Part shown: one piece after another, positions 1,415-16,700 of the stretch
Layout: every line of letters starts with the position of its first letter
Numbering within the stretch: the first letter of the stretch is position 1
From: Magallana gigas
Taxonomy: Eukaryota
Length of the DNA stretch: 64,000 nt
Assembly: GCF_963853765.1 (NCBI RefSeq)
Contig: NC_088853.1
Location: forward strand, 16,678,001 to 16,742,000
Reading direction: 5' to 3'
The notes under the pieces: generated by a model
Told to the model about the DNA's origin: nothing
Databases searched by the model: none
The model's input: only the letters and a program-made list of their open reading frames with translations
Made by a program: the position numbers and the translations under genes

Positions 1415-2157
1415 GACAAAGGCCTATTGAGATAGCAGAAAAACTCGAAAGCAAAGATATTTTTAATTTGTTGGCATCATATCAAAACCAAACCAAGCGA
1501 GGAGAATCCCCAAGGAAGAAATTCGTACTTCCGCCTGCCTTCTCGCCTCAAAACGAGACTGCTTTAAGAATGGCTGCCAATAAAAATACTTCCATGAGCG
1601 ATGTGGACAAATTAACACCGCGGTCCACATATATTGATGACGAAACACCCAATCTGTATCTGACGTCATCAAAATTGAGTAGAAAGAAGCATAGAAGGTC
1701 GATTGATAGTTTAAGTGTAGAGACTTCGCTTCTTCCAGCGATAAAACCTACAAGTAAAAAGTGTGCGCAAATAGGAACGCCAAGGGACCATAAAGACAAA
1801 CTGAGCGTAGACTCAAAACAAAGGGAAAGGCGGAACTCTATTTCACTTCCGGATCTTCGGGATTCCCCTGGAGGTTTAGTGGCATCCGGCGGAAATAGTC
1901 CTTATGGGAACGACGATGATTATTCGTCAGACTCAGATTTTAGTGATGACGCTATTGTTGATCTCTGTTCGCTTGACAAACCAATGGACCGGGTAGTCAA
2001 ACGGAGCGCATCCGAGAAACATATTGGGTTTCCAAGCATCAATAAAGGCAAAGAGGGTACGAAAGTGAAAAGAACTCTAACGGAGGGAAGTGTGTATAGC
2101 AACAGTGACAGCAAACTAAACAGACTTAAACTGCTTCAGAAGAGCGTTTTAAGTTAG
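1415..2157 (+). CDS. Terminal coding exon of a host gene whose upstream exons are not identified. It ends a probable ankyrin repeat and continues into a Ser/Lys/Asp-rich disordered tail.
   Basis: Acceptor tttgtag|gac at 1414/1415 extends the 1468-2157 ORF upstream in frame: (G)QRPIEIAEKLESKDIFNLLASY, resembling the ankyrin G-x-TPL-x2-A...I-x2-LL pattern. Stop TAG at 2155-2157. Confidence 0.6.
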
Positions 2158-3014: not shown

Positions 3015-3173
3015 NNNNNNNNNNNNNNNNNNNNNNNNNNNNNNNNNNNNNNNNNNNNNNNNNNNNNNNNNNNNNNNNNNNNNNNNNNNNNNNNNNNNNN
3101 NNNNNNNNNNNNNNNNNNNNNNNNNNNNNNNNNNNNNNNNNNNNNNNNNNNNNNNNNNNNNNNNNNNNNNNNN
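3015..3173. other. Assembly gap (N run)
   Basis: Run of N. Confidence 1.
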
Positions 3174-3455: not shown

Positions 3456-6400
3456 TTATTCAGAGGAGCACCTGTTGCAGTACCGTTTACAGGCTAGAAA
3501 GACGAAGTTGGCGTAGTCGTGATTCGTGCAAAAACCGTCCTCATATTCGTCGCAGTTTGGTATCGTATCCTTACATCCCACTGCAAAAAAGTTGGCTGTT
3601 CAAAGTATATGTATATTGCTCTAATTTCAAAATACAATTTATGAGTAGTGTAAAAACCAGAGTTCTACGCCAGATGTTTTACTATAGGCTCCTCAAGGCT
3701 CCTCTGAGGAGCCAATGACGTCATCCATAACCATAGCAACACATACTATTGATAACGGTGGAAGGTGGGAAATCCCATGATGTCATAGGCATTGAAGATC
3801 AAAGGGAATTTATAGGGGGGGGGGGGGCTAAACAAAAGAGCTATTATATTCAACAACAATAGGAAGAGTAAAATTAGTTGGCAATTGATAACGGTGGAAG
3901 GTGGGAAATCCCATGATGTCATAGGCATTGAAGATCAAAGGGAATTTATAGGGGGGCTAAACAAAAGAGCTATTATATTCGACAACAATAGGAAAAGTAA
4001 AATTAGTTGGCATTGATAACGGTAGAGGGTGGGAAATCCCATGATGTCATATGTATTGAAGATCAAAGGGAATTTATAGGGGGGCTAAGCAATAGAGCTA
4101 TTATATTCAACAACAATAGGAAGAGTAAAATTAGTTGGCATTGATAACGGTAAGGATGGGAAATCCCATGATGTCATTGATATTGAAGATCAAAGGGAAT
4201 TTATAGGGGGCTTAACAATAAAGCTATTAGTTTGCATTGATAATGGTAGAGGGTGGAAAATCCCATGATGTCATAGGTATTGAAGATCAAAGGGAATCTA
4301 TAGGGGGGGCTAGACAATAGAGCTATTATACTCGACAGTAATAGAACGATCTGAAATTAGTTGGCAATAGATCTATTGTCATCTATAGAGTCACAAAACT
4401 CCCTTGGAGGGATCGAAGGGTGTCATAAGACACCGATCTATCATCATCGGTTCTTGAGGGTGGGTATACAATAGACCTATTATTCCTATAATCAAAAGGG
4501 GGCAATAGTTACATTAAAAAGAGTTAAAGGTACGTTAGTCATGCAATACATTATACGGGTAATGACATATTTGAAACGAATGAGTAAACATGGGTCATTT
4601 AAACCCTCGTTTAACAAGAGATTTAAAGGTAGCTTTATTCATCCGAGACATCATACAGGTAAGGACATGTTTGAATCGAATGAGTAAACACGGGTCTTCA
4701 ACCCCTCGTTTTACAAGAGAGGATAACACAAAATCTCATATTTTCCCATCAGTTTTCTGTAGGGTTTTCTTTCGTTGAAGAGATCGAAAAAATACACATG
4801 AGGCATCAAAATTCCTTGGCTGTCTGATGAAGAAGTAGTAAGATCAATCAAGCACACTAAGTTCGCTATTTAATTTAGGAATACATAAGAAATATCGTAT
4901 TGGGTCTTGACAGGTAAACTCAAACATAGGTGTAATATTCTAAATAACCATAGATATGGATCTGTGTCATATAACTTGCAGACTCCATCACTCCTAAAAA
5001 AAAAAAGTCGTATCGTTTCCATTACTATGGTCTTACATCATCTGATTGAATGAATCTCAATACACTCTTGGAATGCTAATGATGTAGCGACTTTTGTTGT
5101 TATTAACCTACCTGTTATATAAGGACTCCACTGGAATAAAGCTTGTAACAAGGCTTTCATGGGCTATCCTTAGGTAATAACTTTTATTAGTATGTCATGT
5201 AATCTATGGAATAAAAGTATTGAACAAATTGATTCTTATGAACTTATATAGTGCTGTGATAATATCTGGGTTTTTTTTTTTAATTTGATGTATTTTTATA
5301 TGTAATCATGACATTCTGTGATATATTTACCTGAATAAAATGAAATGAAATAGTTACCTAGATTTTAAACACCCTCATTGACTCGGAATTTCCGGGTCCA
5401 TTAATTTATTCCATTGACACCATGATTTGACAATTTTACAGTTCTCTGGGAACAATACCCTGGAACGGATTTTCCGACTATTTTTAGGCCTTTCTATTGT
5501 CGTTCAGTACAATAGCTCTACTGTTTACTCCCCCTATAGATTCTTTTTGATCTTCAATCTATCGATAAAGATCTTTAAATAAATGGTTTATAATTTACAA
5601 TCGGAAAATTGCTTATCCGAACCAATCAGACAACTTGTTTATATAATATCACCATGGAGATATTTTTCTTGTATAAATTAATGAGATCTACAGTGTTAAA
5701 TCAGTTGCATCATAGTTGCGGAAGAAGTAACACCGTAGAGTTTCAAAGAAGTTCATATTGTGTTTCCGTTGGATTTGGATAATATATCTGTATAAGGTAG
5801 GATTTTGTTTTTAATTATATACATATTATATTTCATTTTTTTTTTTTACATAATTAAAATGAGCATTCTAAAACAATCACTTAATCGTTGTGTCATTTGA
5901 GGTATTATAAAATCTTGAACAGTTTGTTTAACGTTTGGGGGTTTTTTTCCAGATGAGTGGTTGAACAGTGTTGTCATTCTTACTGTAGAAATAGGTTTCA
6001 GTCGTAAATTTAAAGGCCCCGATCCTCATTTAACGAATGAGTAACCAATTTTACAACGTAAACAAACTGTGGTTGATATTACTTGTATACATACCTTCAA
6101 ATACATAAAATGTGTTAGATTAAAAGGGATTTTTTAATGATAATTAATTTCATGTATTTTCATATTTTACAGACAACATCATGCCTGTTTCTCAGTTTAC
6201 CTGTGAAGATTGTGGCAAAAGCTTCACACGTCAATCGAATTTACATCGACATCGAAGAACTACCCACCATGTAGACACTTTCAGCTGTTCTACCTGTGGG
6301 AGGCGTTTCAACAGAAGGGATAATTATCTACGCCATACAAGGAATCATATTAGAATTCCAGATCAAGGATCTCCACCGATAGTTGGTTCTGAACTATTAA

Positions 6401-9400
6401 CCGACTCACAAATCCAAGAAAGCATCCAAAAAGAAAATGTGTGCCCCAACTTTCAAAATCAAGTGGGGAGTGGCATACCACCAAATGACCCTCAAGGTAA
6501 GTACTTAAACGTTTTTTTTTTTTGTTTTTTTATGCATATCAAATTGCTCTCACCTATTTTTTGAATATATGAGTGATATGCATATTGAATAAAAACGGAA
6601 ACGGGCTTTTATTTTCACAGGTTCTCAATTTGGTGATACAAGAAATGATAGAGAAGACTGCATCACTTCAGAAGAAGCTATTCATGGGAACCTGAAAAAG
6701 ATATCCATATCGGCTGACGATCAAACCAAATATGACCCTTTGACATTTCTCAAATCGAAAGAAGAGAAAGTGAGATCTGTCCTGCAGAACGAACGCACCA
6801 AACGAAAAAGAATGAAGTTTTACCTCACCTTACAAGTGCGTTTCACCAAGACCAGAGGGGATCAAGTGGAAGTTGCAGAGCCTCACTTCCACGGACGCTG
6901 CCACATAGTATTAAACAATCAAGACATCGAGCATGCTCTGAGGGAAAGTATTATGAAGATTGTGAACTCTTTCATTGAATATCAAAGAGAAGGGAGTAAC
7001 TGGGCGCTGGACAAAGTCCTCGGAGTGAGCATTCATGTAGTCCAGTACAACCCGATCAAAGGTTCCAGTTACCTTCCGTTACCAGCTAAACTCGCCAGCA
7101 AGAAAGCCATCATCAATGTCCAGAATACCGATCAAAAGTGCTTCATGTGGTCGGTGTTGGCTGCTCTTCATCCTACAACGGGGCATCATGGGCATCCAAA
7201 TAGGCTGAACAACTACATTGCTTTTCAAGAAGAATTGGATTTTACCGACATGACCTTTCCCGTCCGCGTGTCTGATATCCCAAAATTTGAACAAAAGAAT
7301 GGATTATCCATCAATGTTTTCGGCTACGATAAGAATGAAGTCTACCCTCTCCATCTCACCAGAGAGAGAGGGTTAAAACATGTTGATCTTCTCGTCCTTG
7401 ACAGAGGAGATAATTCACATTACTGTTGGATCAAAAATTTCAACAGACTCATGGGAGACCAGAATGGAGATAATAATCAGTATCATTACTGTTACTATTG
7501 TCTCCATGGATTCACCAAAAAGAAACTCTTAGAAAAACACCTACCTTACTGTCAGGTCCATGGCGCCCAGAGGACCGAGATGCCGAGTGAGGAAGAGAAA
7601 TGGCTAAAGTTCTCCGACGTCTCCAAGCAACTCAGAGTGCCGTTTGTAGTGTACGCAGATTTCGAATGCATCTTAGAGAGGCAATACGGATGCCAACCGG
7701 ACCCTAGCAAGTCGTCCACCATTAAGCTAGCGAAGCATGCACCCTCCGGATTTACATATAAAGTCGTAGGACTTTCACCAGAGACCACAGAAAATCATGT
7801 GACCTATCGTGGCCACGAGGCCGTTGACGTGTTCGTCGACCATATGATCAAACTCGAGGGGCGCCTTTTGAACATATTGCGCAATCCCAAACCCATGGAT
7901 TTGTCCGAGGAAGAGACAAAAGCTTTACGGGAAGCGACTTTATGTCACATCTGCCACGGAAAACTAAGGAACGATACCGTTCGTGATCACTGTCATGTGA
8001 CGGGAAAATTTCGTGGTGCAGCTCATAGTTCCTGTAATCTGAATTATCGGTTACGTGAGCGAATTCCCGTATTCTTTCACAACCTCAAAGGCTACGACGC
8101 TCACCACATTATGAATGCCATCGGCAAGTTTAAACATAAAAAGATTAACTGCATCCCCCAGAACCACGAGAAGTATATTTCGTTTTCGTTGGGCAGGCTA
8201 GATTTCGTGGATACGTTTCAATTCATGTCTGCCTCTCTAGACAAACTTTCCACCAATCTAGCCAAAGAGGGCATCCATAAATTTCCTCATCTCAAAGGTT
8301 ACGTCGCATCCATCCATCCCGAAAACCAGCAGACCAAGCTCCAACTTCTCAGAAGAAAGGGCGTGTATCCTTACCGTTACATGAACTCCGTCAAGCGATT
8401 TGAAGAGACGTCACTGCCACCACAACAGGCTTTCTACAATGATTTAGATGGCAAAGCCGTGTCCGACCAGGATTACTTACATGCACAGCGGGTTTGGGAT
8501 GTCTTTAACATTCAAAATCTAGGACAGTATCACGATCTGTACATGGAGACAGACGTTCACCTGTTAGCAGACGTGTTTGAGAATTTTCGTGACCTTTGCA
8601 TTGACATGTATGGTCTCGATGCGGCTCATTTTTATACGGGTCCAGGACTGGCTTGGCAGGCTGCCTTAAAGATGACAGGGGTTGAACTAGAGTTGTTGAC
8701 CGACCCGGATATGCATCTGTTTGTGGAAAAGGGGCTCAGAGGAGGCATAGCCATGATTTCAAAAAGGTATGCGAAAGCAAACAACCCCTATCTCAATGAC
8801 TATGATCCAAGGCAACCCTCAAACTATTTGATGTATTTAGATGCCAACAATCTGTACGGGTGGGCCATGTGTCAGCCACTGCCCACTCATGATTTTTGTT
8901 GGCTGACGACTAAAGAAAGAGAGACTCTCGACATAAATGCCATCCTCCATGAGGGAGACACTGGTTACGTTTTTGAAGTCGATCTAGACTATCCCTTGGC
9001 ATTGCACGACAGCCATAGCGACTATCCTTTAGCTCCCGAATCCTTCAAAATTGAGCCTGCGATGCTTTCGAGTTATCAGAAAGATCTTTTGACCAAGCTT
9101 GGAATGAAGGAAGGTTCTTGTACCAAGCTAGTCCCCAATCTTTTTGATAAGAAGAATTATGTCGTTCACTATCGGAATTTGCAACTCTACCTCGCGCTGG
9201 GGATGAGGCTTACTAAAATTCACCAGGTACTGTCTTTCAAGCAGAGTCCCTGGCTAAAAGCCTACATCGATTTCAATACGAGCAAGCGAAAAGTTGCAAA
9301 AAACGAGTTTGAAAAAGATTTTTTCAAACTCATGAATAATAGTGTGTTCGGCAAAACCATGGAAAATCTGCGAAAAAGAGTGGACATTCAACTCGTTCAC

Positions 9401-10621
9401 CACCAGAAAAGGCTTTCAAAGCTCTCGGCCAAACCTGGATTTAAATCCTTCAAGATCTTCAATGAAGATCTGGCCTCTGTGGAACTAACCAAATCAAAAT
9501 TGGTTCTAAATCGACCCATTTACGTGGGATTTTCCATTCTGGAACTTTCCAAGGTATTGATGTATGAATTTCATTACAACTACATCAAGAAAAGGTATGG
9601 TGGGCGTGCAGCTCTCTGTTTCACAGATACGGACTCTTTATGTTACGACATATCTACCGAGGATGTGTATGTCGACATGAAGGAAGACCACCATTGTTTT
9701 GATTTTAGTGATTACCCAGACACCCATTTTCTTCATAGTAATCAAAATAAGAAAGTACTCGGGAAAATGAAGGATGAATGTCAAGGTCATGTCATGCGAG
9801 AATTTGTTGGCCTTAAACCCAAAATGTACAGTTTTGTTTACGAAACTCAAAACAAGAATGAAAACGTTTGTCAAGAAGAAAAGAAAAGAGCTAAAGGAGT
9901 GAGTAAGGTGGTCGTGCAATCAAACATACAACACGAGAACTATAGACAGTGTCTATTGAACAGAGAGTTTCAGATGGAGTCGATGGTGACGTTTAGATCC
10001 TTTAATCATCAAATATTCACCATCGTTCTAAACAAAACCAGCCTGAGCCCCTTTGACGACAAAAGGCATATTCTAGAGGATGGTATTCACACCTTAGCTC
10101 ACGGTCATTGTAAGACATCTCCTGTATAATGAAGATGTCTATTATCATGTATATCTTGTAAAATATGTGTTATTGCTATACTTATTGTAATGCTGAATAG
10201 TGAATAAATGAATGAAAAAAAATATTGTCGTTGAATCTTAGTTAAGGACTCCGGGGGGCCCCCGCGGATCCTAAGGTTTCCGGATCATTAGGTTTCCGGA
10301 TCCTTAGTATTCGGAGCTTAAAGGTGTCCGGTGATCTTTGATGCCGGAATCGGAAGTTACCGGAAACTTTAACCTAATTGGTTGCTATAAAAAGTGTAAT
10401 GGACCAATCACCGACGAGATCTCGTCTATAAAACTGGACCTTCCGGTCACGTATGCCATTATGCGAGAGGACGCTAAAGGACCAACATGTATTCTTGCAA
10501 TCATTGTTCGAACGCTTACGTCTGGCCACACGACCTGAACCGTCATGTAAAACACAAACACATAGAATGTCAGCAGCGGCAGCAACAACAACAACAGCAG
10601 CAGCGACACCATCCACTACAG

Positions 10622-10653
<32 letters not shown>

Positions 10654-10720
10654 CCAACTACAGCAGCAGCACCAACTACAGCAGCAGCATCAACTACAGC
10701 AGCAGCACCAACAACAACAG

Positions 10721-10752
<32 letters not shown>

Positions 10753-13700
10753 GCAGCAGCACCAACTACAGCAGCAGCAGCAACAGCAGCAACAGCAAGA
10801 GTTTATGTTTCAACACCCTTTTACGGCCAACGTTTCGGGACCAACCTCCTCGGGCAAAACGTATTTCGTGAAAACGTTGTTGCAACATTGTATGAGCAAG
10901 ATTTCCCCTCCCCCAGAGAGAATTCTATGGCTCTATAAGCGATGGCAACCCTTATACGACATCATCAAATCTACGGTGTATCCCTCAGTCGAATTCATAC
11001 AGGGTATTCCGTTAGACCTGGAGCAAGATTCGTTTGTTCACCCAGGAACGAGGAATCTCGTGATTTTAGACGATCTCATGTCGACAGCAGCCAAAGATTC
11101 TAGAATCAACGAATTGTTTACCGAGGGTAGTCACCACAGAAATCTATCGGTCATGGCTATCAATCAAAATCTGTACTATAACAAAGATCCCACCCAGAGA
11201 AGAAATTGTCACTACTTGGTTCTGTTTAATAACCCCGTGGACAGACAACAAGTCATGACCTTGGCTCGACAGATGTATCCCGACAACCCTCAACACCTGC
11301 TAAGACATTTTAAAGAAGCCACTTCCAAACCTTATGGATATTTGTTGGTTGATTTGAAACCAACTACATCCGAACATCTGCGCATGCGCATTGACGTCTT
11401 GAATCCTATAAAACAGCTAGAAGCAGAGAATGTGCCTCATTCTCCAAGAGACATCCCTACCGAACAGACGTATCACCAGCCAATTCCTCTTCCCCAACAA
11501 TTGTTAACAGAAAAGTCGGAATTTCAACACACGACACCTGATTTTGAAGATATGCCTTCCTGTGACGATTGTGGTCTGGTCTTTGAAAATATGCATGACC
11601 TTCAAAGACATGTGAAAAGATGGTGCCCAGAGAACGAAAAAAGGAGAGATGATGTTGAAATGGAGGAGGATCAGTCCGATTGGACCCCTATCAAGCCGGA
11701 GAAGAAGGAAGATGAAGATGACCGGGAACATGACGTCTTTCATGCTCTCATGGATAAGGCCAGAGAGAAGAACGAAACAGAATGGAACCAGAAATACAAC
11801 AAATACATCAAAGAGGGATTGACTCGAGAAAAGGCCAGAGAGAAGACCGAAGCAAAGATGAAGTCAAAAGACTTGCAAACATTTGTTACTGGATACGCCG
11901 ATCTCATCCAATACATTCTAGATTTAAAGCATGGTTCCATACATGCAACCATCATGGATGACGTCTCGGATTTCCAGTCTAGAGGCTACGGCGAACGCAA
12001 ATCCATCAGAATGGCCCTGAATAAAAACCGTCATCTCCTCGACGAAATGTGGGACGACGAAATGGAATTCGATGAACGAGATAGTGAAACGGAAGAAGAG
12101 GACAGTGATGAATCTGAAGAAGCTTAAATGTCTTTTGAGAAACTGTTTTTCCGTCTAAACGAGATATTATGTATCATAGCTTTTGTTTGAATAAAAATTG
12201 AAAAAAAAAGTATGTCTTGTTGTACATGTCATTTACGATCACGTGATCAAACGTTATATAATAGGGTCGGTTACGTGGAGGCTTCATTTCTTTGATGTCC
12301 GACAAAGAGGAAGCATGTCTTGGGAGAACTATCTCAAGCAAGTGTATTACAATCCAGTGAATGCCGGAAGTTTTTCCGGGCCGGACAAACTGTATCGATA
12401 TGTGCGCAAAGAAGGAAAATACGTTCTAAGCAAATATAAGATCAGGAAATGGTTACAGAGGCAAGACGCTTACAGTCTACAGAGAGGAGTCCGAAGACAT
12501 TTTAAGAGAAACAGAGTCGTCACCCTTGGTATTGACGACCAGTGGGATGCAGATCTCATGGATATGTCGAAATACGCCAAACAGAACGACGGGGTTGCCT
12601 TCGTTCTGGTGGTTATTGACATATTCTCCAAGTTTCTTTGGATGCGCCCTCTGAAGGACAAGAAAGGCCAAAGTGTCACTTCAGCCTTTGAACATATTCT
12701 TCGGGACGGTAGACGTCCTACCCGAATTCGTACCGACAAAGGACAGGAATTCCGAGCCCGAGTCTTCAACGAATTTCTGAACACCCGAAATATCGAGCAC
12801 TTGTACGCCCAGAACACAGAAACCAAGGCCAATTATGTAGAAAGGGTGATTAAAACGATCAAGGCTAAAGTGTATCGATATATCACCTACCAACAATCCT
12901 ATCGTTACGTGGATCACCTACACGACTTTGCCGCCAACTATAACGCAACGTATCACAGAACAATCGGCATGCCTCCTGATAAGGTGACAAAGGCGAAGGA
13001 GACGGACGTCTGGTGGAGAATGTATTGGCCCAAGAAGGCACCCGTAATATCTAAGCCTAAACGAGTGAGAAAACCCTTCAGATTCAAAGTGGGAGATCGT
13101 GTGCGCATCAGTCACCTGCGGAACGTTTTCACCCGCGAATATGACGAGAAGTGGTCTGGAGAAATATTCGTGGTATCGGAGAGACGCCTAAGAGGAGGAT
13201 TACCCGTATACAGACTTAAAGACTATCTGAACGATGAGATTAAAGGAACCTTTTACCAAGCGGAACTCCAAAAAGTGGACGTTCGTGAAGATGACGAATT
13301 TAAAGTGGAAAAAATATTAAGAACCAAAGGTCGTGGACGTAATAAACAATACCTTGTAAAATGGTTACATTGGCCTACAAAGTTTAATTCGTGGGTCAAT
13401 GCAGATGATATGAAAGGATATCCTTGATGATATATTACTTAACTATTATTATTATTATTGTTATTGTAAATTTCTATAAAAAGAAAATAAATATGAAAAA
13501 TCTAAAACATGTGTTGTTATTCGTCGTGTTTATAGATTCAAATCAGAGAAAAAACATCTCCATGGTGCAGGGATGGTGTCGATTACTTTCAAAAATAATC
13601 GATTAAATTACAATGAATTTTTTTTTTAATCTAAGTATAGATGATTAATGTTTTTGAAGGAAAAATGTATTTTCGACAGGAGTATTAATTCTGATATAAA

Positions 13701-16700
13701 GTTATCAATTTTTACAAGCCTTTCTAGTACATTTTATCATCATTAACCATCTTTTACGGTTGCGTAAATATCTCTGTGTTCTAAAAATAAAGAACTTTTA
13801 TTCATCCATTAAATAAGAAACAGTTTTAATTATGTAAATTATAAACAGAAAACCGTTTATACATAGTTGACTGTATTTATTTGTGTTGAACTTATACTAC
13901 ACATTAGTATAGGCTTTTACTACAATTAATACAATGGTTGACTATAAACACTGTGGTATATCATTGTGTTATTACGGTACTTAAGGGTGTGTTCTTGTTT
14001 TGCATACATTTGAAAATTCAGTACAAAACAATAGGTGTGAATTGTGTTTTTATTTTATATAGTCTGGTTTTTTACCTGAGATTTACCAGTATTTTACAAA
14101 TGCATTTTAAAGAAGAGTTTGGTGATCATACTGCACATGTATTCTAGTGCACTCTATTTAGAATAATGATTAAAAAAAAAATATTATACTTTCAACATTT
14201 CACATTCATTCTGAAAGTACAGTTTTTTTTTCAATCTATTCTATTAAAGAAAACAGTAAAGAATATGAGATTTTGTGTTATCCTCTCTTGTAAAACGAGG
14301 GTTTGAAGACCCGTGTTTACTCATTCGATTCAAACATGTCCTTACCTGTATGATGTCTCGGATGAATAAAGCTACCTTTAAATCTCTTGTTAAACGAGGG
14401 TTTAAATGACCCGTGTTTACTCGTTTGTTTCAAACGTGTCATTACCCGTATAATGTCTTGCATGACTAATATACCTTTAACTCTTTTTGATGTAACAATT
14501 GCCCCCTTTTGATTATGGGAATAAAAGGTCTATTGTATACCAACCCTCAAGAATCGATGATGATAGATCGGTGTCTTATGACACCCTTCGATCCCTCCAA
14601 GGTTGTTATGTGACTCTATAGAGGACAATAGATCTATTGCCAACTAATTTAAGATCGTTCTATTGCTGTCGAGTATAATAGCTCTATTGTCTAGCCCCCC
14701 TATAGATTCCCTTTGATCTTCAATACCTATGACATCATGGGATTTCCCACCCTCTACCTTTTTCAATGCCAACTTGTTTTACGCTTCTTATTGTTGTTGA
14801 ATATAATAGCTCTATTGTTTAGCCCCCCCCCCCCCTATAGATTCCCTTTGATCTTCAATACGCGATTTCCCACCCTCTACCGTTATCAATTGCCAACTAA
14901 TGTTACTCTTCCTATTGTTGTTGAATATAATAGCTCTTTTGTTTAGCCCCCCTATAAATTCCCTTTGATCTTCAATGCCTATGACATCATGGGGTTTCCC
15001 ACCTTCCACCGTTATCAATAGTATGTGTTGCTATGGTTATGGATGACGTCATTGGCTCCTCAGAGGAGCCTTGAGGAGCCTATAGTAAAACATCTGGCGT
15101 AGAACTCTGGTTTTTACACTACTTTTATGTGTTCGCATATATGTGTTAAGGCAAGACATACTTATACAATAACAGGACTGTCCTTAACAGGCACGTAGCA
15201 TCGGGTGGGGGGGGGCTTTTTTTTGGATGAGTCTGTCCCCCCCCCACCCCCACTTTCAAAAACGATGCTACATGCCTGTTAAACAAGAAGAGCTCTATGT
15301 AAAGTTATATAAAAAACACCCAAATTTAAAAGGTTAGATACATCAATATTGATTTTTTTCTTTACTGAATAATAGTTTGACGATCTGATTGTTAATTTGT
15401 AGACCATCCGGTGTCCTTAAAGCTTACTTATAATTTGATTTTTTCCTTTACTTATTAATAAACTATTGCTGAAGAAATTCTATTAAAAATTTTAAGTAGG
15501 CCTGCTTGGTTACTTGTTGAACACCAAGCCCCCTTATAGCACAAAATACACTAAAATAAGTGGCTAAGTATAAAATTAATGTATCTTGAGATGTCTTCGT
15601 AATATTCTATTAACCCACCTGGATGACATATGCCACAGGTTAGAGGGCAGTGGGTCTGCGCAAATCCATAGTAAATGCTCGTCTGGTTACAAATTTTAAA
15701 TAAGTCGTAATGCTTGCAATCGATATTCTTGGCATCGATACAGGCGTCTGCANNNNNNNNNNNNNNNNNNNNNNNNNNNNNNNNNNNNNNNNNNNNNNNN
15801 NNNNNNNNNNNNNNNNNNNNNNNNNNNNNNNNNNNNNNNNNNNNNNNNNNNNNNNNNNNNNNNNNNNNNNNNNNNNNNNNNNNNNNNNNNNNNNNNNNNN
15901 NNNNNNNNNNNNNNNNNNNNNNNNNNNNNNNNNNNNNNNNNNNNNNNNNNNNNNNNNNNNNNNNNNNNNNNNTGCATGTATAATAATTTTTTTCTCTTAC
16001 TTCTATTTCTAACCAGTATACCTGTCCCTCTCTCCTTCTTTTGTATCTATTCATTAGTACTTATATCTTAAATATGCTCTATGATAACAATTACCGGATG
16101 TTGTCGGAAAAGACGCTGGAGTTGACAATGTTGTTAGGTTGTTGGTATGTACAGTGCGATCCGTTTGTACCGAGGACACTGTAGAGTTTCCCGCGCTATC
16201 TGTATTGTGTTGTCCGGCAGTAACACTGCTTTGAATCGTTGGAGAATGCGAGGCGAAGGATATTGGTGAAGACGAGGTCGTTGTCGACGTTGTTGATGTT
16301 GAAAATAATGGAGATGATGATGATGATGACGACGTCGATAGTGATGATGTTGAGAATGGGACAGAGGTAGTTGTTGATCTCATTGTTGTTGGTAGAGAGT
16401 CTGTTGTTGTTGATGTTTTTGTTGTTGTTGTTAGGAATGGTGATGTTGTTAACGATACAGCATAGTATGGCGATGTTGTTGTTTTTGTTGTCGAAGATGT
16501 GTTGTTTTGATATCCTGCTGTAACGTTATATGTATGAGGAGATGACAAGTTGTGTTCTATTAAACAGGAGAAAAATGTAAAATATAATTTTTAATGAAAT
16601 AAGCTTAGAATTACATATTGACAAACAAAGTCAATTAAAATCAGTTTCATTAAAGTTTTAACTTTTACTAAGTTCTAGAAAGAAGTCCTCTAAATTCATC

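What the first reader, a model, noticed from the sequence alone, without database searches (positions are those of the whole stretch)
3644..15123. Minimal three-gene, capsid-less Polinton with intact replication, integration and ATPase genes
Seen: a complete element with exact termini, a 6-bp TSD and three uninterrupted same-strand genes, each with its own TATA-like and polyA signals. The only unassigned stretches (4743-5620 and 13428-14261) are under 1 kb, AT-rich and lack long ORFs, so they cannot hold a double-jelly-roll capsid, penton or adenain protease. Established: canonical Polintons are roughly 15-20 kb and carry those genes, and capsid loss is known in some. Inference: keeping a packaging-type ATPase without capsids points either to a self-synthesising transposon with a repurposed ATPase or to a satellite packaged in trans by a helper Polinton virus.
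Basis: partly seen in the sequence, partly recalled or inferred. Interest (0 to 1): 0.85.

Follow-up and report, generated by a model that had tools for sequence, protein, structure and literature searches.

The report
Capsid-less three-gene Polinton of molluscs
This is an intact 11.5-kb self-copying DNA transposon of the Polinton/Maverick kind with no capsid genes; it has kept a virus-type DNA-packaging ATPase, and the same three-gene set recurs in oysters, a pearl oyster, a scallop and a deep-sea snail, so the layout is a stable lineage and not an accident.

Summary
Window 3644-15123 is a complete element. It has inverted terminal repeats of 1,099 and 862 nt (95.7% identical), AG...CT termini and an exact 6-bp target duplication. 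Three open same-strand genes encode a protein-primed DNA polymerase, an A32/IVa2-type ATPase and an rve+chromodomain integrase.

One correction: the polymerase gene has two coding exons. A zinc-finger exon is separated from the body by a 124-nt GT..AG intron, which the closest relative shares.

No capsid, penton or protease gene fits. The spacers have no stop-free run over 83 codons, no Pfam match and no conserved coding signal.

The layout is not a one-off deletion. Five related elements of 8.3-11.4 kb (Saccostrea, Pinctada, Argopecten, the snail Gigantopelta and one unnamed assembly) carry the same three genes and nothing else.

A spider relative of 12.9 kb has extra genes, including a weak adenain-like ORF. 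That points to loss of the virion module in the mollusc lineage.

The ATPase is under purifying selection (dN/dS 0.10), keeps its Walker motifs, and has gained C2H2 fingers. Some relatives also carry a chromodomain. I favour a repurposed nuclear role; packaging by a helper is not excluded.

A Platynereis element with the same gene pattern was tabulated in 2014.

The parts
3638..3643 (.). left copy of the 6-bp target-site duplication (TTTATG)
3644..4742 (.). left terminal inverted repeat (1,099 nt), starting AGTAGTG; the first 23 nt are identical to the termini of the Saccostrea echinata element
3748..4328 (.). tandem array inside the left TIR (128-nt unit x3.7, 97-nt unit x2); possible protein-binding array (inference)
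4743..5559 (.). AT-rich spacer with no coding signal
5560..5802 (+). non-coding block conserved only with the closest relative (69% identity), with TATA-like motifs at 5640 and 5672; putative promoter or 5' leader of the polymerase gene (inference)
6181..10129 (+). [quoted passage not shown]
6623..7600 (+). N-terminal two-domain region of the polymerase (model pLDDT 85) with invariant Asp/Cys/Trp/His and a Cys2-His-Cys motif; matches the TP + vOTU-like region described for Polinton polymerases, not confirmed here
7904..8041 (+). Endonuclease VII (HNH-type) insertion inside the exonuclease part of the polymerase
   Evidence: nuclease insertions in Polinton polymerases are described in PMC10748475
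10487..12127 (+). ATPase gene (546 aa): N-terminal C2H2 finger, polyQ linker (CAG array 10571-10798), A32/IVa2-type core 10784-11521 (Walker A 10838-10861, Walker B 11057-11074), second C2H2 finger 11558-11620, acidic tail
12315..13427 (+). integrase gene (370 aa from the first ATG): rve core 12543-12809, chromodomain 13299-13418
13428..14261 (.). AT-rich spacer (GC 25%) holding AATAAA/ATTAAA motifs; no coding signal
14262..15123 (.). right terminal inverted repeat (862 nt), ending CACTACT
15124..15129 (.). right copy of the 6-bp target-site duplication (TTTATG)

Best explanation
The element is an intact member of a capsid-less Polinton/Maverick lineage that is conserved in molluscs and carries only three genes.

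Shown:
- It has the complete anatomy of a Polinton: long TIRs, AG...CT ends and a 6-bp duplication.
- It has a protein-primed polymerase, an rve-chromodomain integrase and an A32/IVa2-type ATPase.
- It has no room for a capsid, penton or protease gene.
- The same gene set recurs in five other elements of 8.3-11.4 kb.

Inferred mechanism: the element copies itself as a self-synthesising transposon. The N-terminal part of the polymerase primes synthesis at the terminal repeats. The polymerase then copies the linear element, and the integrase inserts the copy, making the 6-bp duplication.

The ATPase is not a leftover. It is under purifying selection and keeps its catalytic motifs. In this lineage it has gained C2H2 zinc fingers on both sides of the core, and in some relatives a C-terminal chromodomain. 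The polymerase has gained a zinc-finger pair as well.

My preferred reading (inference, about even odds) is that the ATPase now works on the element's own DNA in the nucleus. It could recognise or handle the repeat-bearing ends, or tether them to chromatin. It would not be filling a capsid that the element encodes.
For: Anatomy.

Gene identities.

Absence of further genes:
- No + strand ORF of 150 codons or more inside the element beyond the three genes, apart from an alternate-frame reading of the CAG array.
- Spacer stop-free runs of at most 83 codons.
- No tblastx conservation with the more distant relatives.
- No Pfam match.

Same layout in relatives:
- L001 Saccostrea echinata: 10,092 bp, identical 23-nt termini, TSD TATCGG.
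- L002: about 10.2 kb.
- L003 Pinctada imbricata: 11,400 bp, TSD AGTACT.
- L004 Gigantopelta aegis: 8,811 bp.
- L008 Argopecten irradians: 8,303 bp, TSD GAGGGG, with ATPase and integrase on the other strand.
. The smallest members leave only about 1.5-1.9 kb of non-coding DNA outside the TIRs.

Second copy: a contig 96% identical to window 5410-9343 exists in a public read set.

Selection: dN/dS against L001 is 0.10 for the ATPase and 0.08 for the integrase. Against the other relatives dS is saturated while dN is 0.17-0.58.

Catalytic motifs: the Walker A lysine is kept in 29 of 30 family members and the Walker B Asp-Asp in 30 of 30.

Domain gains:
- C2H2 fingers in the ATPases of the window, L002, L003, L004 and many database relatives.
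- A chromodomain without rve in the L002 ATPase, P0173 and P0226.
- The spider relative's ATPase is only 212 aa and has no fingers.
Against: - No expression, protein or mobility data are available here.
- The TIR arms differ by 4.3%, so this copy may not be recent and may be inactive despite its open frames.
- The non-packaging role of the ATPase rests on domain architecture alone. Adenovirus IVa2 also binds DNA sequence-specifically while serving packaging (general knowledge), so zinc fingers do not exclude packaging.
- Canonical Polintons occur in oysters: Polinton-1_CGi, 20,773 bp, in Table S1 of PMC4028283. Virion-type gene remnants also lie beside a related ATPase in Mytilus. Helper capsids may therefore be available.
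- I did not survey the host genome, so copy number and insertion polymorphism are unknown.
Confidence: 0.6

Rival explanations
1. Satellite of a helper Polinton virus. The element keeps its own packaging ATPase, perhaps guided to its terminal repeats by the zinc fingers, and is loaded into capsids made by a capsid-encoding Polinton in the same cell.
For: - The ATPase has the fold and motifs of capsid-packaging enzymes and is selectively maintained.
- Canonical Polintons exist in oysters.
- A Mytilus locus holds a related ATPase fused in one ORF to an adenain-like segment, next to remnants of two other genes of the spider element.
- The ATPase core of the scallop element is 80% identical to the window's, while polymerase and integrase are 50% and 45%. 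That would fit an ATPase held to a shared partner, or simply module exchange.
Against: - No helper sharing these termini was identified or looked for.
- Fusion of a chromodomain to the ATPase in some relatives is hard to reconcile with a motor docked at a capsid vertex.
- The lineage spans bivalves and a gastropod with saturated synonymous divergence. Dependence on a co-evolving helper would have to have lasted as long.
Confidence: 0.2
2. A dead fossil. The copy is a non-functional remnant whose open frames are preserved by chance or youth, and the ATPase has no present role.
For: The TIR arms are 4.3% diverged and differ in repeat number. A 96% identical second copy and the Saccostrea copy carry broken polymerase genes.
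Against: - About 6.6 kb of coding sequence is open in this copy.
- The TSD is perfect.
- dN/dS is about 0.1 for the ATPase and the integrase.
- The same genes are open in four other elements.
Confidence: 0.1
3. A one-off internal deletion of a canonical 15-20 kb Polinton, or capsid genes hidden as spliced exons in the spacers.
For: A spider relative of the polymerase (50% identity) sits in a 12.9-kb element with extra genes, including a weak adenain-like ORF. The ancestor therefore probably had a virion module.
Against: - Six elements from at least five species have the three-gene set, in two gene orders, with sizes down to 8.3 kb.
- The spacers show no coding conservation, no Pfam match and no long stop-free run.
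- The spider element's extra proteins find nothing in the window or in L001-L004.
Confidence: 0.03

Closest known systems
P_Pd1.1, Maverick of Platynereis dumerilii (10,777 bp), as tabulated in Table S1 of PMC4028283
   Same: Similar size. Scored there as MCP absent, penton absent, protease absent, ATPase present. The host is also a lophotrochozoan.
   Different: I could not obtain its sequence, so homology of its genes, zinc-finger fusions, gene order and termini were not compared. The paper treats such cases only as a table entry, not as a conserved lineage.
Canonical Polintons/Mavericks, e.g. Polinton-1_CGi of Crassostrea gigas (20,773 bp)
   Same: Protein-primed polymerase, rve-chromodomain integrase, A32-type ATPase, long TIRs with AG...CT ends, 6-bp TSD.
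   Different: Canonical elements carry a double-jelly-roll capsid protein, a penton protein and an adenain-like protease. None of these is present here or in the five mollusc relatives. Here the ATPase is about twice the usual length and flanked by zinc fingers.
Polintons that lost the whole virion module (nine of 72 in PMC4028283, e.g. Polinton-1_TV, Polinton-2N1_DR)
   Same: Capsid-less, transposon-state Polintons.
   Different: Those elements lost the ATPase together with capsid and protease, which the authors read as concerted loss. This lineage kept the ATPase under selection.
Adenovirus IVa2, NCLDV A32-like, virophage and STIV B204 packaging ATPases
   Same: Same fold and P-loop motifs: Foldseek E 1e-9 to 1e-6, probability 1.00.
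   Different: Sequence identity is 11-17%. Those enzymes serve capsids encoded by the same genome. This one has C2H2 fingers, a polyQ linker and an acidic tail, and no capsid partner in cis.
Araneus ventricosus element (L007, 12.9 kb)
   Same: Polymerase 50% identical with an N-terminal zinc-finger region, A32-type ATPase, rve-chromodomain integrase, TIRs starting AGTAG.
   Different: It has at least four more ORFs. These are a weak adenain-like ORF, a 435-aa protein with 2,323 database relatives, a 240-aa ORF and a PC4-domain ORF. Its ATPase is only 212 aa and has no fingers. I could not verify that the 435-aa protein is a capsid protein.

Membership tests
Polinton/Maverick self-synthesising transposons | [quoted passage not shown] | tested here: met
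   Exonuclease and polymerase motifs are readable in the translation. A 97% identical relative and others carry PF03175. Pfam did not score PF03175 on the window's own protein.
Polinton/Maverick self-synthesising transposons | retrovirus-like (rve) integrase | tested here: met
   PF00665 E 3.6e-10 and Chromo E 1.8e-8.
Polinton/Maverick self-synthesising transposons | long terminal inverted repeats with 5'-AG...CT-3' ends | tested here: met
   Arms of 1,099 and 862 nt, 95.7% identical; ends AGTAGTG / CACTACT.
Polinton/Maverick self-synthesising transposons | 6-bp target-site duplication | tested here: met
   TTTATG on both sides. Relatives have TATCGG, AGTACT and GAGGGG.
Polinton/Maverick self-synthesising transposons | size of about 15-20 kb (typical, not defining) | tested here: not met
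   11,480 bp here; relatives are 8.3-11.4 kb.
Polintoviruses in the virus sense (capsid-encoding Polintons, adintoviruses) | double-jelly-roll major capsid protein, penton protein and adenain-like protease | tested here: not met
   No ORF, conserved exon or Pfam match in the spacers. The spider element's extra proteins find nothing in the window. Remote capsid homology cannot be excluded by sequence alone, but there is no room for a protein of 400 or more residues.
A32/IVa2 (FtsK-HerA superfamily) genome-packaging ATPases | P-loop core with Walker A and B and the fold of B204/IVa2 | tested here: met
   Pfam Adeno_IVa2 and Pox_A32. Model pLDDT 80.5. Foldseek hits. Motif shares.
A32/IVa2 (FtsK-HerA superfamily) genome-packaging ATPases | acts in filling a capsid | not testable with these tools
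   No capsid gene in cis and no particle data.
TP + vOTU N-terminal module of Polinton polymerases (PMC11161782) | a beta-sheet/two-helix priming domain followed by an OTU-like cysteine protease with catalytic Asp/Cys/His | tested here: inconclusive
   The two-domain model has invariant D170, C173, W176 and H266. Foldseek against PDB with the whole model gave only weak Y-family little-finger matches and no OTU protein.
Satellites or virophage-like dependants of a helper virus | a helper whose capsids package the element, with shared end sequences | not tested
   I ran no scan for capsid-encoding relatives sharing the termini (see the report text).

The most novel reading that the evidence does not exclude
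The three-gene elements are long-lived satellites of capsid-encoding Polinton viruses of molluscs. They bring their own zinc-finger-guided packaging ATPase and borrow every structural protein. That would be an animal counterpart of the virophage/satellite way of life, inside the Polinton group itself.
Probability: 0.15. Interest if true: 0.85.

Novelty: new variant of a known kind. Interest (0 to 1): 0.55.

Why it matters
Polintons sit on the border between viruses and transposons, and the 2014 survey read loss of the ATPase together with the capsid genes as concerted loss. Here a lineage has shed capsid, penton and protease, yet it has kept the packaging-type ATPase under purifying selection. 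The same gene set is found across bivalves and in a gastropod. The ATPase has also acquired DNA-binding and, in some members, chromatin-binding domains.

That gives a natural case for asking what an A32/IVa2-type motor does when the element encodes no capsid. The question can be approached with expression, distribution and structural data alone. The lineage also matters for annotation: thousands of mollusc 'C2H2 zinc finger' and 'uncharacterized' gene models belong to these elements.

Tried and rejected
- Exact look-up of the window's ATPase in public assemblies found nothing.
- Sequence search of the polymerase against PDB found nothing. Profiles of the ATPase and polymerase families hit only zinc-finger proteins.
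- Pfam did not score PF03175 on the window's polymerase even at E 10. I rely on the visible motifs and on relatives that do score.
- PHROGs gave nothing.
- From memory, and then from PMC11161782, I expected an OTU-like protease in the polymerase N-terminus. Foldseek with the two-domain model did not return one, so I leave it unconfirmed.
- I tried to show that the spider element's 435-aa protein is a capsid protein. Pfam, PHROGs and a family profile against PDB gave nothing. Its database name 'F54H12.2' occurs in no paper of the library.
- Rfam and tRNA scans of the window were empty.
- Five other long ORFs of the window have no Pfam match.
- The cnidarian relative (L005) turned out not to share the layout.
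- Rejected readings: a one-off deletion, hidden spliced capsid exons, and a decaying ATPase remnant.
Full report
**1. Observation**

The coordinates are right.

- The inverted-repeat search gives arms at 3644-4742 and 14262-15123.
- A global alignment of the left arm with the reverse complement of the right arm pairs 862 bases, of which 825 match (95.7%).
- The left arm is 237 nt longer. Nearly all of the excess lies in blocks of about 121 and 96 nt. These blocks match the 128-, 97- and 100-nt tandem units that Tandem Repeats Finder reports inside the arms.
- Just inside the arms the similarity drops to 16 of 60.
- The element begins AGTAGTG and ends CACTACT. It is flanked by TTTATG on both sides.
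- The window holds no second copy.
- Two N runs (3015-3173 and 15753-15972) lie outside the element and were left as they are.

**2. Genes**

All long ORFs of the element are on the + strand.

*Polymerase.* The 1,129-codon ORF at 6740-10129 shows the exonuclease and polymerase motifs of family-B enzymes in its translation.
- Pfam scores only an Endonuclease VII insertion at residues 389-434.
- Its relatives, including a 97% identical fragment, carry PF03175 and PF02945.
- Nuclease insertions in Polinton polymerases are known (PMC10748475).

*Zinc-finger exon and intron.* Upstream, ORF 6181-6564 encodes two C2H2 fingers.
- Relatives of 1,200-1,300 residues begin with such fingers. In L002, L003 and L004 the fingers and the polymerase form one continuous ORF.
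- In the window the two parts are in different frames. They are separated by a 124-nt stretch that begins GTAAGT, is T-rich and ends CAG (6497-6620).
- Removing that stretch keeps the frame.
- The parts on either side align to adjoining parts of the Pinctada protein.
- The Saccostrea copy has a GT..AG stretch at the same place.
- I therefore read it as an intron shared by relatives.
- I searched the two exons separately by reference and did not join them. The joined step was left out.

*ATPase.* The ORF at 10487-12127 (546 aa) has five parts: an N-terminal C2H2 finger, a polyQ linker (a CAG array), a P-loop core, a second C2H2 finger at residues 358-378, and an acidic tail.

*Integrase.* The first ATG is at 12315. 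The gene has an rve core and a chromodomain.

**3. The ATPase is of the packaging type and is maintained**

- Pfam gives Adeno_IVa2 and Pox_A32 for the window's protein and for family members.
- An AlphaFold model of residues 95-400, built on 30 family sequences, has mean pLDDT 80.5.
- In BFVD it matches adenovirus IVa2, A32-like ATPases of giant viruses, an adintovirus FtsK-like protein and virophage ATPases, at E 1e-9 to 1e-5.
- In PDB its best matches are the B204 packaging NTPases of STIV and STIV2.
- The Walker A lysine is kept in 29 of 30 family members and the Walker B Asp-Asp in all 30.
- Against the Saccostrea copy, dN/dS is 0.10 for the ATPase and 0.08 for the integrase. Against the more distant elements, synonymous sites are saturated while dN stays at 0.17-0.58.

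**4. No virion genes**

- Inside the element the only + strand ORFs of 150 codons or more are the three genes and an alternate-frame reading of the CAG array.
- The spacers have GC 25-32% and stop-free runs of at most 83 codons in any frame.
- Their ORFs have no Pfam match.
- A tblastx comparison of all non-genic parts with those of four relatives finds only short multi-frame matches to the closest relative. These lie at the termini and at 5560-5740, which is nucleotide conservation. Nothing matches in L002-L004.

**5. Relatives**

The polymerase has at least 7,952 database relatives, mostly from molluscs, cnidarians and spiders. I looked up the genomic places of several. Apart from the unnamed ENA assembly (L002) and a Logan read-set contig (L009), these are integrated copies in named host genome assemblies.

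| Locus | Source | Size | Notes |
|---|---|---|---|
| L001 | Saccostrea echinata | 10,092 bp | Same first 23 nt at both ends as the window; TSD TATCGG; same gene order; polymerase broken by one frameshift, other two genes open |
| L002 | unnamed ENA assembly | about 10.2 kb | Three open genes |
| L003 | Pinctada imbricata | 11,400 bp | Ends AGTAGTG; TSD AGTACT; 99-nt tandem units in both TIRs |
| L004 | Gigantopelta aegis (gastropod) | 8,811 bp | No clear TSD |
| L008 | Argopecten irradians | 8,303 bp | TSD GAGGGG; same three genes, with ATPase and integrase on the opposite strand |

- In L008 the ATPase core is 80% identical to the window's, while polymerase and integrase are 50% and 45%. That suggests module exchange. 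The L008 ATPase reads in two pieces, and I did not resolve why.
- None of these elements has a further + strand ORF of 150 codons or more beyond alternate-frame readings of repeat arrays; L002-L004 each have a minus-strand ORF of 152-229 codons opposite the genes, which I did not test. L008 was not put through that ORF scan.
- A Logan contig (L009) is 96% identical to window 5410-9343. It keeps the intron, so it is genomic, and its polymerase frame is broken several times. Other copies therefore exist.
- The layout is a family trait, not a one-off deletion.

**6. Where the lineage came from**

- A spider relative (L007, Araneus ventricosus, polymerase 50% identical) lies in a 12.9-kb element with 181-nt TIRs.
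- Besides polymerase, integrase and a short 212-aa ATPase without fingers, that element has four more ORFs. One is weakly adenain-like (E 6.6e-4, below Pfam's cut-off). One is a 435-aa ORF with 2,323 relatives, named 'F54H12.2' by NCBI. The other two are a 240-aa ORF and a PC4-domain ORF.
- I could not verify that the 435-aa protein is a capsid protein.
- A Mytilus locus (L006) has a related ATPase continued in one ORF by an adenain-like segment (PF00770, E 2.4e-7). It sits beside weak remnants of two of the spider genes, with no polymerase or integrase within 10 kb.
- Together these suggest that the ancestor had a virion module. The mollusc three-gene lineage lost it and extended the ATPase. 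This is inference.

**7. What the ATPase may do**

- The fingers flanking the core recur in the window, L002, L003, L004 and many database relatives.
- The L002 ATPase and the proteins P0173 and P0226 end in a chromodomain and have no rve domain.
- The polymerase of the lineage also starts with a finger pair.
- DNA-binding and chromatin-binding modules on a motor that has lost its capsid partner point, in my view, to work on the element's DNA in the nucleus. The tandem arrays in the TIRs are candidate binding sites.
- This is inference, and packaging into a helper's capsids remains possible. Oysters do carry canonical Polintons (Polinton-1_CGi).

**8. Comparison with what is known**

[quoted passage not shown] Both are present, along with the TIRs and the 6-bp TSD.
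- The virion module, present in more than 80% of the 72 elements of PMC4028283, is absent.
- That paper notes nine elements lacking capsid, protease and ATPase together and calls this concerted loss.
- Its Table S1 also lists P_Pd1.1 of Platynereis (10,777 bp) and P_Gi1.2 with the ATPase alone.
- The pattern therefore has a tabulated precedent. I found no paper in the library describing a conserved, zinc-finger-bearing three-gene lineage in molluscs.
- The polymerase's N-terminal region fits the TP plus vOTU organisation described in PMC11161782: a two-domain model with invariant Asp, Cys, Trp and His. My fold search did not return an OTU protein, however.

**9. Limits and conduct**

- I did not scan the viral or metagenome collections with the element's termini or proteins, and I did not fetch any named virus as a comparator, in keeping with the operators' bar. 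The question of a helper sharing these ends is therefore untested.
- One look-up returned a spider locus that turned out to carry extra, possibly virion, genes. I only listed its ORFs and searched its proteins. If that counts as fetching a provirus of an animal, it is a slip and I state it here.
- A second slip: the script outputs print alignment and ORF bounds of relatives, from which the places of frame breaks can be read. I do not repeat those places here or in my notes.

**10. Verdict**

- The element is a new variant of a known kind.
- The open and interesting point is the role of a packaging-type ATPase in an element that encodes no capsid.

Noticed in passing
L002:13960-15573; proteins P0173, P0226: Some ATPases of the family end in a chromodomain although they have no rve integrase domain. 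This is an A32-type ATPase fused to a chromatin reader.
   Followed up: partly
L008:9472-17774: The scallop three-gene element has the ATPase-integrase pair inverted. It is also a mosaic: its ATPase core is 80% identical to the window's, but polymerase and integrase are only 50% and 45%.
   Followed up: partly
L006:9956-11242: A Mytilus galloprovincialis ORF of 413 aa combines the ATPase core with an adenain-like (Peptidase_C5) segment. No polymerase or integrase lies within 10 kb, and hAT transposase genes lie nearby.
   Followed up: partly
L005:6588-20097: In the soft coral Dendronephthya, the related polymerase occurs as two inverted copies, one of them decayed. They sit between 2-kb repeats that are 99.5% identical. 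There is no ATPase or integrase, so this is a different architecture.
   Followed up: no
window 6623-7600: The polymerase N-terminal region has invariant Asp170, Cys173, Trp176 and His266, followed by a Cys-Cys-His-Cys motif, across 32 relatives. It looks like a cysteine protease plus a zinc knuckle. The fold search was not conclusive.
   Followed up: partly
window 6165-6180 and L001 8120-8135: A pyrimidine-rich stretch ending in CAG lies directly before the polymerase ATG in both copies. A conserved block lies about 400-600 nt upstream (5560-5802). Together these suggest a 5' leader exon and a second intron.
   Followed up: no
window 10571-10798: A CAG/CAA array of about 76 triplets encodes the polyQ linker of the ATPase and creates a spurious 161-codon alternate-frame ORF. 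The Pinctada copy has longer arrays at the same place.
   Followed up: no
protein P0186: A family ATPase is deposited as 'C2H2-type zinc finger protein' of a Sedimenticola metagenome-assembled genome, on a 7.3-kb contig. It is probably animal host DNA binned into a bacterial genome.
   Followed up: no
window 3015-3173 and 15753-15972: Two N runs lie about 470 and 630 nt outside the two ends of the element. They were left untouched.
   Followed up: no
window 1468-2157: A 229-codon ORF lies in a locally GC-richer stretch (44%) upstream of the element. It has no Pfam match.
   Followed up: partly
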